This document shows, in pieces, positions 23,052 through 27,845 of a DNA stretch of 64,000 nucleotides. Positions within the stretch are counted from its first letter, which is position 1. The number at the start of each line of letters is the position of its first letter. The stretch covers positions 124,001 through 188,000 of the forward strand of contig NC_079167.1 in the NCBI RefSeq assembly GCF_947568905.1, written 5' to 3'. The notes under the pieces are model-generated. The model ran no database searches and was not told the DNA's origin. It saw only the letters and a list, made by a program, of their open reading frames with translations. The stretch is from Ostrea edulis. Its lineage: Eukaryota. Made by a program: the position numbers and the translations under genes.

Positions 23052-24344
23052 ATGATATTTAGATTGGAAAAAAAAATATTTATATTTAATTTAATAATAA
23101 TTTTAAGATGTAATTCTGACATCAAACTACCGTCACTTAATATTATACCTAAACCTCATAAACTTAAACAAAAAGCTTCACCCGAAATCCAACATTTATT
23201 AAAATCACGACCCATAGTCAACGGTTTCAATACTATTATTACAGAACCTTCCAAAATACTCAGCAAACTTGTAAGACATTTTCTAAATAAGCTTAGAATT
23301 AAATACAATAAACATGACATTTTAGTCAACAGTTCTTTCCATGTCATAAACCAACTTAACAAAATATCCATTGATCCCTATGACATGGATATACATTTTA
23401 TATCATTCGATTTTTCCTCTTTATATACCAGTATTGACAATAAAACAGTCATTAACTCATTTCTGTTCTTACAGAACCAGTTAAATATTAAACAAGAAAC
23501 TATACAATTTATGATAGAACTTTTCACCTATATAAAATTAAATGCTTATTTCCATGTAGGTTACAAGCGTCGATTTCTACAAAAACAAGGTTTAGCAATG
23601 GGTTCTTATGATTCTGCAGACATAGCTAATTTAGCGCTCTTCATCTCCGAAATTGCTTTTTTTAACTTCTCCAATGTACACAACAGAATCATTTACATGG
23701 CTAGATATATTGATGATGGTGCCATAATTTTGTACAGTAAACCAAACCAAATAATGTTTGACATCCATGAAATTAAGAAATACTACCCCAAAGAGTTAGA
23801 AATCACCTTCAGTATAAACAAAATACAAACACAATTCTTAGATATCACTTTCGGTATTGGATACACCACATTTACAGATAATAAAATTTACACTTGTATC
23901 TACCAGGAACCTTACAATTCTTACAGTTACATACATTTTACTTCCGGTCACCCCAAACATTTCTTTAAGGGTGTAATAACCACTGAATGCCACAGATACC
24001 GTACCATATCAAGCAATGATCTAGAACATTATACTATATGTAAATTATTTGCTATCAGACTCCAAAGATGTGGATATCCTAAGAAATATATCAAAAAACA
24101 TATGTTACCTTACTTATTCACTCCAGATGGAAATTTCTATAGAAAACCCATACATTTTACTAATATATTTGGTAATATCAAACATCAAAATACTTCACAA
24201 GAACACAAACTTGTCAGATATATACTTACCAAGTCACCACCCTTCCATTACAACTGGGTTTTCAGCTACAGTGTTGGTAAAAAACTTAAACAAATACTCC
24301 TTACTAAACGTAAACTTCATTCTAAGATTTATAATTATATATAA
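23052..24344 (+). CDS. Penelope-like reverse transcriptase, probably 5'-truncated, no C-terminal endonuclease
   Basis: IPKPHK, SRPIVNG, FDFSSLYTSI, QGLAMGS, RYIDD, FLD, YQ(K/E)PYNSYSYIHFTSGHP, RLQRCGYP; ORF stops after SVGKKLKQILL..., where Penelope-type elements would begin GIY-YIG. Confidence 0.88.
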   Translation: MIFRLEKKIFIFNLIIILRCNSDIKLPSLNIIPKPHKLKQKASPEIQHLLKSRPIVNGFNTIITEPSKILSKLVRHFLNKLRIKYNKHDILVNSSFHVINQLNKISIDPYDMDIHFISFDFSSLYTSIDNKTVINSFLFLQNQLNIKQETIQFMIELFTYIKLNAYFHVGYKRRFLQKQGLAMGSYDSADIANLALFISEIAFFNFSNVHNRIIYMARYIDDGAIILYSKPNQIMFDIHEIKKYYPKELEITFSINKIQTQFLDITFGIGYTTFTDNKIYTCIYQEPYNSYSYIHFTSGHPKHFFKGVITTECHRYRTISSNDLEHYTICKLFAIRLQRCGYPKKYIKKHMLPYLFTPDGNFYRKPIHFTNIFGNIKHQNTSQEHKLVRYILTKSPPFHYNWVFSYSVGKKLKQILLTKRKLHSKIYNYI

Positions 24345-24525
24345 AGTCATTTACACATCATATTACAACTTATTAAATTAACTATCTACCAAATTTAATA
24401 ATTATTAATCCAATACATAATTTTCAATTTCATATTATGTTCTACTTACTAAATATAACTATCCAACAATTCTAAATATTTATAAATTAATTTTATTATA
24501 CTGTAACTTTCAGTCAATACACAGT

Positions 24526-24948
24526 ATGAGCCATTTCCTGTCCATGGTGTTTCAAGAATTTACTAACTTTGACTATGTTGACACCATATATTGTGATGTT
24601 AATAATATTCCTTTCAACTTTAACAAAAATAACATTTCACTACAAATTCCATGTATGGATTTCTGTGATTCTCAAGTTGTTATATCCTTTAAGTACCTAG
24701 GTACACATAAAAACACTATTTACTACATAGGCAAACAAAGCAAAAAAGTTAGAGAATGCAAATACTTCCATACATTTTTATTACTAATATATGACACTGT
24801 CAATGAGCAAGGCATTATTATAAATACACCATTCACTAAATCTATCTCTTGGTTTGCACACAAAATGTACCACAATCTTAAACTTTCAGTGTGTTACGAT
24901 ATTTTCAGATTTTATTTCATGCACGATATAAATTTTTCTCATTGGTAA
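24526..24948 (+). CDS. Unknown 140-aa ORF2 downstream of the RT
   Basis: ATG-initiated, 140 open codons in very AT-rich DNA, same strand as RT; no domain recognised. Confidence 0.45.
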   Translation: MSHFLSMVFQEFTNFDYVDTIYCDVNNIPFNFNKNNISLQIPCMDFCDSQVVISFKYLGTHKNTIYYIGKQSKKVRECKYFHTFLLLIYDTVNEQGIIINTPFTKSISWFAHKMYHNLKLSVCYDIFRFYFMHDINFSHW

Positions 24949-25183
24949 ATATGTGTCTGTCTGAGGTTTATTGTGTTATACATGGTATTGGTTTTTTCAA
25001 CTAAACATATTCATAGACTACAGTATTTCATAAACTATAGCTACAGATTTAAATATATACATATACGGACTTTGTCAATGGATACGAAATATTAACACTA
25101 TATGTATGTTATTAAAAATAATATATATACTGTAATTGTATACAGAATATAAGCACGCTACATATGTTAGTACAATTTGTATA

Positions 25184-25297
25184 TATATAGACTTTATTAG
25201 TGTGTATGGACTATAAACACACTACTTGTGTTATAACACATTTATATAGACTTTGTTAGTGTGGATGGACTATAAACACACTACTTGTGTTATAACA
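25184..25297 (+). repeat. 59-bp tandem duplication inside the element
   Basis: tatatagacttt(a/g)ttagtgtg(t/g)atggactataaacacactacttgtgttataaca twice; mirrored in the left arm. Confidence 0.9.
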
Positions 25298-26194
25298 ATT
25301 CATATAATACATATAATTACACAAATGTACTAATTATTGTTATAGCAATATTTATACATCGCATTGTAATTATTTTTTTAAGTTATGACAATATAGTATA
25401 ACTTTTAGTCATAATAATATGTATTGAATTTTATGTGTACACATTATATATAGTATGATAAAGATATTACAATTTCCTCAATCTCCATTAAATCACTAAA
25501 ATTATTCAAATTAATCATATATATAATCACATATATAATCACAATTTCTTATTTTCATCTCAAATCAACATATTCATATTCATGTCAATATAAAAACCCA
25601 TGGTTTTTCTTTTAATTCCATTATCAATTATTATTCCTCACTCCATTATCTATTATCAATTATTATTCCCCATACTAATTTTAAATTAAATTTTTGTTTT
25701 TTTTAATATTGATTTTACATATATTAATTCATTATTTATACTGATTGATATTATTATTATATTATTTGTACTGATTCAATAAATTCATAAACTTCAAATG
25801 CTTCTACATTGTTATTTATATAACGGTATACCATATCACAGTTTTCGCGGAAAAATCACTAACTCAAATGCACGTCATAATAGTAACATACGCAATCAAT
25901 CACGTCATAACATTAACATACGTAATTAATCTCGTCATTTCCATTTCGAATCCTTTAGTTCAGTTGGGTTTTCACTAAGTTCCTTCCGTTTGGTAAGTAA
26001 AACCCATTTAAATATGTTATAATTACGTTATTATTGTCTACAACATTAATTAATTTAAGCACTTTTAGCGATCTTTACAGTCAATTCATTACCTATGCAT
26101 CTTTGTCGGCAATAACTTAATTGTTTAAAAAATTCTTTTATTAGTTATAGCATAAATTCTATTAGTTATAACTAAAATATACGTTCACCAAATA

Positions 26195-26505
26195 TCATTT
26201 TAGCACTATTAATTCAGCTAATGTTTACCACCATAACTAAAGGGTCCTTTCATCGTTCAAATGTTATATATCCGTCAATTACAGTTTAACATTATAAATT
26301 TATACACTATCTTTTTAGCACTGTAACATTAACAAATATTTACTACCATAAACAAAAAGGTTCTTATCGTACAGTGTATATGCTTTCATCGTTCAAATGT
26401 TTATACTAAATCCGTCAATTACAGTTTAACATTATATTTTATACGCAATCTTTAGCACTGAAACGTTAACAAATATTTACTACCATAACTAAAAGTTTCT
26501 TAACG
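26195..26505 (+). repeat. ~137-140-bp degenerate tandem repeat inside the element
   Basis: catcgttcaaatgtt, tccgtcaattacagtttaacattata and taccataa blocks recur at ~137-140-bp spacing. Confidence 0.8.
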
Positions 26506-26614
26506 TATATACTTACAAAACCGTACAACATCTAATTTTACAAACATCAATAATTATTATATTAAACTTAATCTTACAGCATTATAATAAATTTTTGGCC
26601 TTCGGTAGCGTATG

Positions 26615-26686
26615 GTCTCCGTGGCCGAGTGGTTAGAGCTCATAATCACAAGGTATACCGTCGAGAGTTCGAGTCCTGCTTACGCA
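26615..26686 (+). tRNA. tRNA-derived pseudogene / SINE-like head with intact Pol III A and B boxes
   Basis: A box TGGCCGAGTGG (26622-26632) and B box GTTCGAGTCC (26667-26676) at tRNA spacing (45 nt); acceptor and T stems pair poorly, so not a functional tRNA. Confidence 0.65.
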
Positions 26687-27044
26687 TATAAATAAATTTT
26701 TAACAAATTTTTTTTCTCTCTTTCTTTCTTTCCCTCTTTTTTCTCTCTATATGAATATGGATATGGATTACAATTATTATTATATTATATGTATATATCT
26801 GTGCATATGTAAATGTATGTTTATGTGTTTATATGTAAAATATTATGCTATAATATCACGGGTATAAAAATTTTTAAAATCAATTATTATAGCCATTAAT
26901 ATAGTCATAATTTAATCTATGTCATACTAATTTGTTATATGAACTAACTCACTAACCTTTTTACTTTATTACTTTATTATTTTATTACGATATACATCTT
27001 TAGTTTACATACATAATACATACTATCGAATAAGAGTTAGGGAG

Positions 27045-27114
27045 CCATGTCGTGCTATAAGCTGGATCTAGCTACAGAAACATGGTACAGGGTATGAGGT
27101 GTAGCACCTGATGA
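27045..27114 (+). ncRNA. Candidate hammerhead-like ribozyme with permuted segment order
   Basis: CCATGT-C-GTGCTA ... GAA-ACATGG ... TAGCAC-CTGATGA: stem III (6 bp), GUC site, stem I (6 bp) and both core strands present; stem II not resolved. Confidence 0.4.
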
Positions 27115-27845
27115 CGACCTCAAAATTCTTGCCTAATGACGATCTCAAAATTGTTGTATGGCAAAATTTATAATTAATAACTAATAACTAGTAGCACTCT
27201 ATTATCAAAATTTTCTTTGGCGACCCTACCCTAATTCTTTTCTGTATATATTTTAGTTATTTCACATGTATATACATACCTACATGTACATCCCTATTAC
27301 TATTACCTGTTACTAATATTACTAATTATTACCTTCTATTAAAATCCAAATCCAAATAAATATTAAATATTCTGTTATTTATAAAATATAATATATTAAA
27401 CATAAATTATTATTATAATTAGATCTATTATAATTATATCTATTAAATAAATCAAATCAAATAAAAATCATTATATTAAATTTTCTTGATCAATTTTATT
27501 AATCATTTATAAGTTACTTCTTTATTTGATTATAATTTATGACATATGACCACATGTATGTGTCCGGCCATCAAAAGACAGTACCACAGTCATTAGACGT
27601 GTTGGTACACGATGGTCCTTATTTATTTATATTTATTTATTTTTAAACCATGGGACAACCCATACGTCCCATACGGAGCATATGTATGTTACTACAACAC
27701 ACTTCAACTTCACTACGTTGGTGCATTTGGGAGGTGTTGGAGGGTGAGGCTGGATCGCAATGAGATGGATAGTATTATGGCAGATAATACAGTCACCATT
27801 CGGTTAACGATATATAGTTAACCAATCCTACGAATATCAAACAAA

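What the first reader, a model, noticed from the sequence alone, without database searches (positions are those of the whole stretch)
23052..27841. Atypical Penelope-like element: RT without C-terminal endonuclease and a 3.5-kb multi-module 3' region
The RT is PLE-type but clearly different from the abundant Naiad copies in the window, and the element looks more AT-rich than its flanks. Typical PLEs have short 3' regions. This one carries an extra ORF, internal tandem repeats, a Pol III module, a ribozyme-like motif and a structured end. Endonuclease-less, multi-ORF PLEs are known mainly as telomeric Athena/Terminon-type elements, yet this one inserted interstitially with a TSD. It may be an undescribed PLE lineage, possibly horizontally acquired. 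An N-terminal endonuclease lost by truncation cannot be excluded.
Basis: partly seen in the sequence, partly recalled or inferred. Interest (0 to 1): 0.82.

Follow-up and report, generated by a model that had tools for sequence, protein, structure and literature searches.

The report
Endonuclease-less Penelope-like twin insertion in oyster
Two dead, head-to-head copies of a rare jumping gene sit inside an oyster gene; its copying enzyme is of the Penelope type, but no DNA-cutting domain was detected in it, its neighbouring genes or its full-length relatives, so how it enters chromosome interiors is an open question.

Summary
The unit is 18859-27845, a 9-kb near-perfect palindrome. It consists of two head-to-head, 5'-truncated copies with 4.1-kb identical arms. 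A 58-bp target duplication flanks it, and it lies inside the coding exon of a HEPN_DZIP3+Ig gene; removing it restores a 313-aa ORF. RT homology starts at 23114. The ATG at 23052 lies in 125 nt of unrelated filler.

The RT is Penelope-like (hhalign 99.6% to a canonical EN+ PLE). Full-length relatives (~750 aa) end where the window ORF ends. No GIY-YIG was detected at either terminus, in ORF2, or in an upstream ORF0 that has an SGNH-esterase fold. The family forms its own clade outside the sampled EN+ clade and lacks the Naiad insertion. Its nearest labelled look-alikes are rotifer proteins, which is an Athena-like lead only.

ORF2 is conserved across the family. The 3' region to about 26.9 kb has roughly the same read depth as the RT in other individuals. 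The last ~800 nt are about 20-60 times more abundant.

The hammerhead and the "structured end" are not supported. The "Pol III module" is a sub-threshold tRNA-Ser-like stretch. There is no evidence for horizontal transfer or telomere association. Earlier notes of this scan on the same stretch reported the palindrome and the TSD.

The parts
18801..18858 (.). Left copy of the 58-bp target-site duplication, part of the host HEPN_DZIP3+Ig exon
   Evidence: It is a direct repeat of 27846-27903, 57/58 identical. Joining 18279-18858 to 27904-28265 gives an intact 313-aa ORF, 92% identical to the paralogue at 31967-32911.
18859..22988 (-). Inverted, more severely 5'-truncated copy. It holds the 3' region, ORF2 (21742-22164) and the RT C-terminal part from the YIDD motif onward (22346-22988).
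   Evidence: It is the reverse complement of 23702-27845, with 0 substitutions in 4130 nt and one 10-nt indel at 19055-19070.
22989..23113 (.). Filler between the two copies. It is a piece of an unrelated repeat with an ~87-nt period, and it supplies the spurious ATG at 23052.
   Evidence: Raw reads show about 5-10 times higher depth here. Consistent foreign flanks lie before 22993 and after 23113, and there are tandem 'goes back 86-92' joints. Protein homology to relatives starts only at residue 22.
23114..24344 (+). 5'-truncated PLE-type reverse transcriptase (fingers motif 1 to thumb and linker), with no endonuclease. It corresponds to residues ~341-746 of the 752-aa relative P0002.
   Evidence: BLASTP gives 51% identity to P0002 341-746 and 72% to P0001. 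hhalign of the family profile against a canonical EN+ PLE gives 99.6%. A contig from another individual continues the RT frame upstream of 23114.
24526..24948 (+). ORF2, a conserved 140-aa protein of unknown function
   Evidence: Homologues of 141-151 aa lie downstream of the RT in L001, L003, L004 and L005. There are 10 database relatives. The AF2 model (pLDDT 66) has no significant fold match. It is not GIY-YIG.
25059..25297 (+). Tandem repeat of 58-64 nt, 4 copies
26199..26507 (+). Tandem repeat of 115-137 nt, about 3 copies
26607..26687 (+). Degenerate tRNA-Ser(GCT)-like stretch with A-box-like and B-box-like motifs, followed by T runs
   Evidence: It is called only by ARAGORN at 80% threshold. 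Standard ARAGORN and Rfam at E<=10 do not call it. The boxes were seen by eye. The fold is not better than shuffles.
27040..27845 (+). High-copy 3' tail module ending ...ATATCAAAC(AAA). The start coordinate is approximate.
   Evidence: Read depth rises from about 5-13 in the body to 52-483 here. More than 240 reads end at 27845 or 27849 against diverse AT-rich flanks. About 146 reads run on into one shared foreign sequence.
27846..27903 (.). Right copy of the 58-bp target-site duplication

Best explanation
What it is: 18859-27845 is a single insertion event of a low-copy, endonuclease-less Penelope-like retroelement into a coding exon of an oyster HEPN_DZIP3+Ig gene.

Family structure: full-length members carry three ORFs. 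ORF0 has an SGNH/GDSL-esterase fold, the middle ORF is a ~750-aa PLE-type RT with a DKN variant of the DKG motif and no GIY-YIG, and ORF2 is a small conserved protein. A multi-kb 3' region follows.

This copy: it is dead. Both halves are 5'-truncated, and neither has ORF0 or the N-terminal ~340 codons of the RT.

Most likely mechanism (inferred):
1. Two nicks staggered by 58 bp exposed two 3'-OH ends.
2. Each end primed reverse transcription on the 3' end (...CAAACAAA) of an element RNA through short A/T-rich microhomology.
3. One cDNA stopped at the YIDD codons. The other stopped 588 nt further upstream and switched template onto an unrelated repeat RNA, which gave 125 nt of filler.
4. The two cDNA ends were joined and each was copied on the other. 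The result is a head-to-head palindrome with both 3' ends outward, plus a 58-bp TSD.

The source of the nicks is unknown. My split is: a nuclease acting in trans (another PLE's endonuclease or a host enzyme) about 50%, pre-existing or replication-associated nicks about 35%, an unrecognised nuclease in an element protein about 15%.
For: Shown:
- Palindrome geometry and TSD.
- The exon is restored when the insert is removed.
- Both outer ends are element 3' ends.
- The left junction has 5 of 6 nt of microhomology. The target TGTTCG matches the TGTTTG that complements the element end CAAACA. At the right junction the target AAAA abuts the element's AAA.
- The filler is foreign.
- PLE identity: hhalign gives 99.6% over 426 columns to P0023, which carries a canonical GIY-YIG with the two intervening cysteines. 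It gives 0.2% to the window's Gypsy RT. The same precomputed Pfam pair, DUF8422 + HTH_animal, is found on EN+ PLEs of insects, echinoderms, a coral and a fish.
- No endonuclease: the C-termini of relatives coincide with the window ORF's end. None of the 150 best hits of the profile search has a YIG motif. Pfam finds nothing in the N-terminal parts. The PLE endonuclease profile scores <=0.1% against the family N-terminus, ORF2 and ORF0. tblastn finds nothing in the element or in the flanks of the relatives' loci searched.
- ORF0 is an SGNH-type esterase.
- ORF2 is conserved.
- The same architecture, an inverted 5'-truncated twin with 99.5-100% identical arms and a 3' region of at least 6.8 kb, recurs in a 43%-identical relative in another genome.
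- An adjacent inverted 5'-truncated copy is a described PLE trait (PMC8557442).
- Other individuals carry the RT, ORF2 and 3' region at roughly uniform depth and 97-100% identity.
Against: - No reads were shown to span the centre of this particular palindrome, so its inner junctions rest on the assembly alone.
- A long TSD is what an element-encoded nuclease usually produces, and none was found.
- The tail (about 27040-27845) is far more abundant than the body, with a sharp step in depth. The RNA that was copied may therefore have carried a borrowed or shared tail, and another element's enzyme could have done the copying.
- A single-RNA snap-back (hairpin self-priming with a 713-nt loop) would give the same DNA product as two RNAs.
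- Placement relative to named PLE clades is untested.
Confidence: 0.72

Rival explanations
1. The element is an ordinary EN+ PLE (Naiad-type with an N-terminal GIY-YIG, or canonical with a C-terminal one), and its endonuclease is missing here only because of truncation or decay.
For: The window copy is indeed 5'-truncated by about 340 codons, so its own N-terminus cannot be inspected.
Against: - Fifteen full-length relatives have a complete N-terminus with no GIY-YIG by Pfam at E<=10, by motif search or by hhalign.
- Their C-termini stop at the linker, about 10-15 aa before where P0023's endonuclease begins.
- No endonuclease remnant is found in any frame of the element.
- The spacing between RT motifs A and B is 57 aa. 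It is 84 aa in the window's IFD-bearing (Naiad-like) copies.
- The family lies outside the sampled EN+ clade, which has SH-aLRT 100 and a stem of 0.84.
Confidence: 0.05
2. The palindrome is an assembly fold-back artefact, and the real locus holds one copy.
For: The 4.1-kb arms have zero substitutions, while the TSD has one mismatch. PLE inverted structures are known to trouble assemblies (PMC8557442). No read evidence was obtained for the inner junctions.
Against: - The two flanks are collinear halves of one host ORF, and each abuts an element 3' end. A single copy cannot give this, and a fold-back chimera would invert the flank.
- The centre is asymmetric and contains foreign filler.
- The same architecture occurs in an independent assembly of another organism.
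Confidence: 0.07
3. The RT-bearing RNA was mobilised in trans. It carries the ~800-nt tail of an abundant resident retroelement, and that element's RT and endonuclease recognised the tail, nicked the target and copied the RNA. On this view the endonuclease-less RT played no part in this insertion.
For: - The tail is about 20-60 times more abundant than the body, with a sharp depth step at about 26.9-27.04 kb.
- Hundreds of reads end at the same 3' terminus against diverse flanks.
- The long TSD and twin structure are typical of EN+ PLE insertions (PMC8557442).
Against: - The tail matches none of the other PLE copies in the window.
- The endonuclease-less RT and ORF2 are conserved over about 45% protein identity in several hosts, which argues that the RT is used.
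- A distant relative in another genome shows the same twin architecture and a similar terminal motif, AATATCAA. An 8-nt match could be chance.
Confidence: 0.25
4. The 3.5-kb 3' region is a one-off 3' transduction or a pile of nested insertions, not part of the element.
For: The region is modular: tandem repeats, a tRNA-like piece and a high-copy tail. No nucleotide similarity to the 3' regions of distant relatives was found.
Against: - ORF2 is family-wide.
- Contigs from two other individuals cover stretches between 23124 and 26434 at 98-100% identity, with roughly uniform depth from the RT to about 26.9 kb.
- A 96.8%-identical contig links the RT end to ORF2.
- Relatives have 3' regions of at least 6.8 kb.
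- Both twins carry the identical region, so it was in the template RNA.
Confidence: 0.1

Closest known systems
Athena (endonuclease-deficient PLEs of bdelloid rotifers) and the Terminons built around them
   Same: - PLE-type RT with no endonuclease.
- Accessory ORFs, including a GDSL/SGNH esterase (PMC5408684; ORF0 in relatives).
- Long multi-ORF units.
- The nearest labelled Atlas clusters of a family member are rotifer HTH_animal/DUF8422 proteins, scoring 0.96-0.98. This is a lead only.
   Different: - Athena and Coprina attach to telomeres through reverse-complement telomeric repeats with adjacent hammerheads (PMC8557442). Here there is no telomeric array in the element or within 10 kb of 11 related loci, and no hammerhead.
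- This insertion lies inside an exon with a 58-bp TSD.
- The host is a mollusc.
- No phylogenetic test against named Athena sequences was possible.
Canonical C-terminal EN+ PLEs (Penelope/Poseidon, Neptune, Nematis)
   Same: - RT core, N-terminal DKG-type domain, thumb, and even the linker up to the point where the endonuclease would start.
- Variable-length TSD, and an inverted 5'-truncated copy adjacent to the longer copy (PMC8557442).
   Different: - No GIY-YIG.
- DKN instead of DKG.
- Extra ORF0 and ORF2, and a multi-kb 3' region.
- No hammerhead.
- Outside the sampled EN+ clade in the tree.
EN- derivatives inside EN+ clades (Chlamys PLE-X families; Neptune-like MjPLE01 of kuruma shrimp)
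   Same: They are PLEs without an endonuclease that are not tied to telomeres. They are cited as cases that must secure 3'-OH groups by alternative means (PMC8557442).
   Different: Those are recent losses nested within EN+ clades. This family is a deep, separate branch, and its 150 nearest cluster representatives all lack the YIG motif of GIY-YIG.
Naiad/Chlamys (N-terminal EN+ PLEs)
   Same: Abundant in molluscs, lack canonical hammerheads, and form inverted or tandem insertions (PMC8557442).
   Different: The family has no N-terminal GIY-YIG, no conserved Cys (CxC) motif and no DKA. It lacks the ~20-aa IFD insertion: motif A to B is 57 aa, against 84 aa in the window's Naiad-like copies.
Esterase-ORF1 non-LTR retrotransposons (CR1, L2, RTEX)
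   Same: An SGNH/PAF-acetylhydrolase-like esterase ORF lies upstream of the RT ORF (PMC5408684).
   Different: The RT class is different, and those elements carry an AP-type endonuclease.
L1 twin priming
   Same: Two 3'-OH ends of one staggered break both prime reverse transcription, giving an inverted junction inside a TSD-flanked insert. This comparison rests on my own knowledge.
   Different: Twin priming copies non-overlapping parts of one RNA. Here the two arms overlap completely (4.1 kb identical), which needs two RNAs, a second pass, or snap-back self-priming.

Membership tests
Penelope-like elements (RT class) | RT core with profile-level similarity to bona fide PLE RTs and not to other RT classes | tested here: met
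   hhalign of the family profile gives 99.6% over 426 columns to P0023, an EN+ PLE. It gives 95-96% to the window's other PLE RTs and 0.2% to the window's Gypsy RT.
Penelope-like elements (RT class) | N-terminal conserved domain with the DKG motif | tested here: met
   Full-length relatives carry L.KGPNFIPT and ADKNLG, so DKN replaces DKG. The precomputed Pfam DUF8422 is shared with EN+ PLEs. The window copy itself lacks this region through 5' truncation.
Penelope-like elements (RT class) | Complex insertion architecture: pLTR, or an inverted 5'-truncated copy adjacent to the longer copy | tested here: met
   An inverted twin is present in the window and in a relative's locus. The trait is described in PMC8557442.
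Penelope-like elements (RT class) | Hammerhead ribozyme in the repeat or 3' region (present in all PLE clades except Naiad and most Chlamys) | tested here: not met
   Rfam finds none at E<=1 in 18000-29000, none at E<=10 in 26560-27200, and none at the gathering threshold in the window or in L001-L006.
Canonical EN+ PLEs (Penelope/Poseidon, Neptune, Nematis, Hydra) | C-terminal GIY-YIG endonuclease | tested here: not met
   The ORF and all full-length relatives stop at the linker. No endonuclease is found in any frame downstream.
Canonical EN+ PLEs (Penelope/Poseidon, Neptune, Nematis, Hydra) | RT nests within an EN+ clade | tested here: inconclusive
   The family lies outside the one EN+ clade sampled, which comprises 20 relatives of P0023 and has support 100. 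Named Neptune, Nematis and Hydra references were not available.
Naiad/Chlamys | N-terminal GIY-YIG endonuclease with a CxC linker | tested here: not met
   Pfam finds nothing at E<=10 on eight N-terminal regions. The motif search is negative. hhalign of the endonuclease profile against the N-terminal profile gives 0.04%. There are no conserved Cys in the N-terminal alignment.
Naiad/Chlamys | IFD-like insertion of about 20 aa between RT motifs A and B | tested here: not met
   Motif A to B is 57 aa in the family, 60 aa in canonical EN+ PLEs and 84 aa in the window's other PLE copy.
Athena/Coprina (EN- PLEs) | PLE RT without any endonuclease domain | tested here: met
Athena/Coprina (EN- PLEs) | Telomere association through reverse-complement telomeric repeats near the 3' end, with an adjacent hammerhead | tested here: not met
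   The element holds only single degenerate units. No (TTAGGG)3 occurs in any of 11 related loci. The insertion lies in an exon. There is no hammerhead.
Athena/Coprina (EN- PLEs) | RT groups with named Athena or Coprina sequences in a phylogeny | not testable with these tools
   No named reference sequences could be fetched. The only lead is that the nearest Atlas clusters of P0006 are rotifer proteins.
Terminons | Giant multi-ORF unit built on an EN- PLE RT with accessory enzymatic ORFs such as GDSL esterase | tested here: inconclusive
   Relatives have an ORF0 with an SGNH fold. Foldseek gives E 4e-5 to sialate O-acetylesterase and GDSL esterases on a low-confidence model, and Atlas features score 0.93. 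One relative sits in a 22.8-kb composite. The window copy has only the RT remnant and ORF2, and no telomeric context.

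The most novel reading that the evidence does not exclude
A deep, animal-borne clade of three-ORF (SGNH esterase, RT, ORF2), endonuclease-less Penelope-like elements is seen here in an oyster and in assemblies whose ORF0 look-alikes are mollusc and annelid proteins. The novel reading is that this clade colonises chromosome interiors by its own endonuclease-independent dual priming at staggered breaks, regularly producing long TSDs and perfect multi-kb palindromes. 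That would be a third way of life for PLEs, beside telomere attachment and GIY-YIG-mediated insertion.
Probability: 0.3. Interest if true: 0.75.

Novelty: new variant of a known kind. Interest (0 to 1): 0.58.

Why it matters
Endonuclease-less PLEs are described as generally restricted to chromosome ends (PMC8557442). That restriction underlies ideas on how telomerase and PLEs are related.

This case is a recent endonuclease-less PLE insertion inside a coding exon. Its target duplication is clean, its tail is dispersed at hundreds of sites, and full-length relatives in other hosts are conserved. Such elements can therefore reach internal sites. The case also offers a concrete system (junctions, microhomologies, twin structure) in which to ask where the priming 3'-OH comes from.

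It also points to a large set of PLE-like RTs, at least 1,134 clusters at E<=1e-30, that is barely annotated. None of the 150 nearest representatives has the GIY-YIG YIG motif.

Practically, 9-kb to 23-kb perfect palindromes of this kind are hazards for assembly and annotation, and this one has knocked out a HEPN-Ig gene copy.

Tried and rejected
- Pfam on the window RT and on ten relatives found no family in the local copy. The PLE-specific families exist only as precomputed hits.
- Sequence and profile searches against the PDB gave nothing useful.
- A hidden endonuclease was rejected for the RT N-terminus, ORF2, ORF0 and all frames of the element.
- ORF2 fold searches gave no match.
- The hammerhead was rejected, and a tRNA gene was rejected at standard thresholds. 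The significance of the structured end was also rejected.
- There is no telomeric-repeat association.
- No other copies of the element or its tail occur in the rest of the window.
- An exact search for the tail in JGI metagenome contigs found nothing.
- The 3' region shows no nucleotide conservation with distant relatives.
- TSDs around the relative's 22.8-kb composite could not be found, and its ends are embedded in a shared satellite.
- Cluster look-ups gave no organism names, so host range rests on Atlas taxa only.
- Substitutions between close copies look roughly neutral: ORF2 has 2 synonymous and 8 non-synonymous, the RT part 6 and 6. This says nothing about function.
- The N run at 3500-3640 was left untouched.

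Full report
**1. What is in the sequence**

The finding covers 23052-27841, which is only the right half of a larger structure. The repeat finder shows inverted arms at 19055-22988 / 23702-27635 and 18855-19070 / 27630-27845. Aligned in a script, the arms have no substitution in 4130 nt and one 10-nt indel in an AAAT-type run.

Between the arms lie 713 nt present only in the + copy (22989-23701). Outside them lies a 58-nt direct repeat, 18801-18858 and 27846-27903, with 57/58 identical. The whole 18859-27845 block has 22-30% GC against 35-40% in the flanks, and its GC skew is mirrored.

The left flank is the end of an ORF with a HEPN_DZIP3 domain. The right flank is an Ig-domain ORF. Joining 18279-18858 to 27904-28265 gives one uninterrupted 313-aa ORF, 92% identical to the intact paralogue at 31967-32911.

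So this is a real insertion with a 58-bp TSD in a coding exon, and both outer ends are element 3' ends (...ATATCAAAC). A fold-back assembly error cannot give that geometry, because it would invert one flank.

**2. The RT and its truncation**

The 430-aa ORF has no hit in the local Pfam copy. The word-index search found 23 relatives, most of 715-753 aa, carrying the precomputed Pfam families DUF8422 and HTH_animal.

The window ORF aligns from its residue 22 to its end with residues 341-746 of the 752-aa P0002 (51% identity), and with P0001 at 72%. The copy therefore lacks about 340 N-terminal codons. Its C-terminus is the family's natural C-terminus.

Raw reads of two other oysters show that 22993-23113 belongs to a different repeat. 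That repeat is about 5-10 times more abundant, has consistent foreign flanks on both sides, and forms tandem joints with a period of 86-92 nt. A contig from another individual continues the RT reading frame upstream of 23114. The ATG at 23052 is therefore fortuitous and lies in filler DNA.

The - copy is truncated further, at the YIDD codons.

**3. Which kind of RT**

The family alignment A1 shows L.KGPNFIPT and ADKNLG in the N-terminal half. It also shows PK.HK...GRPIVNG, FDF.SLYT, RYIDDG and a thumb with S.HP...FKG.

Profile-profile comparisons of A1 gave:
- 99.6% over 426 columns to P0023. P0023 carries a textbook C-terminal GIY-YIG with the two cysteines between GIY and YIG.
- 95-96% to the window's other PLE-like RT fragments.
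- 0.2% to the window's Gypsy RT.

Canonical EN+ PLEs of insects, echinoderms, a coral and a fish carry the same DUF8422 + HTH_animal pair. The RT is therefore PLE-type.

**4. No endonuclease anywhere**

- The family ends about 10-15 residues before the point where P0023's endonuclease starts.
- Pfam at E<=10 finds no GIY-YIG in eight N-terminal regions.
- None of the 150 best representatives of an exhaustive profile search has a YIG[EQKS][TS] motif. That search found 13,753 hits at E<=1e-3 and 1,134 at E<=1e-30.
- A profile of 15 PLE endonuclease domains scores <=0.1% against the family N-terminus, ORF2 and ORF0.
- tblastn with those domains finds nothing in any frame of the element or in the flanks of the relatives' loci searched (L001, L003, L005 and the merged L004/L011 locus).

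A quick maximum-likelihood tree was built with 81 rows and 575 columns under LG+G4. It puts the window RT with P0001 and P0002 inside a well-supported core clade. The 20 EN+ sequences form a separate clade with support 100 on a long stem. The family is not nested in it.

The spacing between motifs A and B is 57 aa, against 60 aa in EN+ PLEs. In the window's other PLE copy it is 84 aa, which fits the IFD of Naiads (PMC8557442).

I had no named Athena or Coprina sequences. The only pointer is that the nearest Atlas clusters of P0006 are rotifer HTH_animal/DUF8422 proteins, scoring 0.96-0.98. Rotifers are the hosts of Athena. This is a lead, not a test.

**5. Other genes of the family**

Downstream of the RT, every full-length locus has a 141-151-aa ORF homologous to the window's ORF2 at 24526-24948. 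The pairwise E-value is 6e-12, and alignments A2 and A3 support the homology.

The AF2 model of ORF2 (pLDDT 66) is a helix, an antiparallel sheet and two helices. It has no significant PDB or Atlas match. Its function is unknown.

Upstream of the RT, two relatives have a 233-242-aa ORF0, 61% identical to each other. It carries SGNH-like blocks (TDSKG, WHGTCD, DGVHP). Atlas features point to GDSL-lipase and PAF-acetylhydrolase clusters. Foldseek hits are almost all SGNH esterases, with E down to 4e-5, although the model is poor at pLDDT 52.

GDSL esterase ORFs are known from Athena and Terminons, and from CR1/L2 LINEs (PMC5408684). The window copy has no ORF0 because of truncation.

**6. The 3' region**

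Confirmed features:
- Tandem repeats at 25059-25297 and 26199-26507.

Not confirmed:
- Hammerhead: Rfam finds nothing at E<=10, nor in the whole window or L001-L006 at the gathering threshold.
- Structured end: z-score -1.2.
- tRNA gene at standard thresholds. A relaxed ARAGORN run calls a tRNA-Ser(GCT)-like stretch at 26607-26687, with box-like motifs and T runs after it.

Is the region part of the element?
- Both twins carry it, so it was in the template RNA.
- Contigs from two other individuals cover stretches between 23124 and 26434 at 98-100% identity. Depth is roughly uniform from the RT to about 26.9 kb.
- A 96.8%-identical contig from another run links the RT end to ORF2.
- A relative has a 3' region of at least 6.8 kb.

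So the region is not a one-off transduction.

The last ~800 nt behave differently. Raw-read depth jumps from about 5-13 to 52-483. More than 240 reads in one run end at 27845 or 27849 against diverse AT-rich flanks. About 146 reads run on into one shared sequence that is absent from the window. This tail is either shared with abundant non-autonomous or truncated copies, or it was borrowed from another family. I could not decide between these.

**7. The twin architecture recurs**

In another genome, the locus of P0009 (43% identical RT) is a 22.8-kb composite. Its inverted arms of 6.8-7.8 kb are 99.5-100% identical. The left copy is truncated just after ORF2. Both outer ends are the same 3' end...CAAACAATATCAA.

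An adjacent inverted 5'-truncated copy is a described PLE trait (PMC8557442).

**8. Mechanism**

Shown: two outward 3' ends, a 58-bp TSD, foreign filler at the inner junction, and microhomology at the junctions. At the left junction the target TGTTCG matches 5 of 6 positions of the TGTTTG that complements the element end. At the right junction the target AAAA abuts the element's terminal AAA.

Inferred: both 3'-OH ends of a break staggered by 58 bp primed reverse transcription of element RNA. One cDNA switched template to another RNA. The two cDNA ends were then joined and copied on each other. Snap-back self-priming of one cDNA with a 713-nt loop would give the same product.

Unknown: what made the nicks. 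EN- PLEs are thought to need alternative means of securing 3'-OH groups (PMC8557442). A nuclease in trans, pre-existing nicks, or an unrecognised activity all remain possible.

**9. Horizontal transfer and age**

I found no evidence for transfer. Relatives in other hosts are also AT-rich relative to their flanks. The element occurs in runs from 8 studies under the same oyster species label.

Read depth suggests a handful of body copies per genome. The identical arms and near-identical TSD indicate a very recent event or homogenisation of the arms.

**10. Verdict and limits**

This is a new variant of a known kind: an endonuclease-less, multi-ORF PLE lineage caught as a dead twin insertion in an exon.

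Limits:
- There is no named-reference phylogeny.
- The inner junctions of this palindrome are not verified by reads.
- The tail's origin and the nick source are open.

The earlier scan notes on the palindrome and the TSD agree with what I found.

Noticed in passing
L011 1-9976 + L004 (one contig of ERZ25073814); merged coordinates 7120-29940: A relative of the element (P0009 RT) sits in a 22.8-kb inverted composite. The arms are 6.8-7.8 kb and 99.5-100% identical. At least three further near-identical copies (L008-L010) share a flanking ~180-nt satellite. Two of these loci lie within 6 kb of a contig end, but no telomeric repeats were found.
   Followed up: partly
window 27040-27845: The tail is 20-60 times more abundant in raw reads than the RT body. 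About a third of the reads at the end continue into one shared sequence (CATTACTTCCAAGGTGATCC...) that is not in the window. This could be a tandem or non-autonomous form.
   Followed up: partly
window 22990-23113: The filler at the inner junction is a piece of an AT-rich repeat with an ~87-nt period, at roughly 5-10 times the depth of the element body. In other places it abuts inverted copies of the tail end (opposite-strand joints 23113/27850 and 22993/27815).
   Followed up: no
window 18821 vs 27866: The 58-bp TSD has one G/A mismatch, while the 4130-nt arms have none. Possible causes are arm homogenisation, a fill-in error, or polishing.
   Followed up: no
window 41895-41924(-) and 56493-56504(-): There are perfect (CCCTAA)2 and near-perfect longer telomere-like runs inside other repeats. 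The window holds 16 matches at <=2 mismatches against 2.6 expected.
   Followed up: no
window 18279-18858+27904-28265, 31967-32911, 54764-55426: These are tandem paralogues of a HEPN_DZIP3+Ig gene family. The first is knocked out by the insertion, and the second is intact (314 aa).
   Followed up: partly
P0044 (960 aa, Logan contig): A family RT is fused to an N-terminal OTU-like cysteine protease domain (Pfam E 9e-11).
   Followed up: no
window 6809-10751: A Gypsy-type LTR retrotransposon with gag, protease-RT-RNase H and integrase ORFs. It served as the negative control for the RT comparison.
   Followed up: no
No endonuclease was seen with the C-terminal endonuclease probes.
   Followed up: partly
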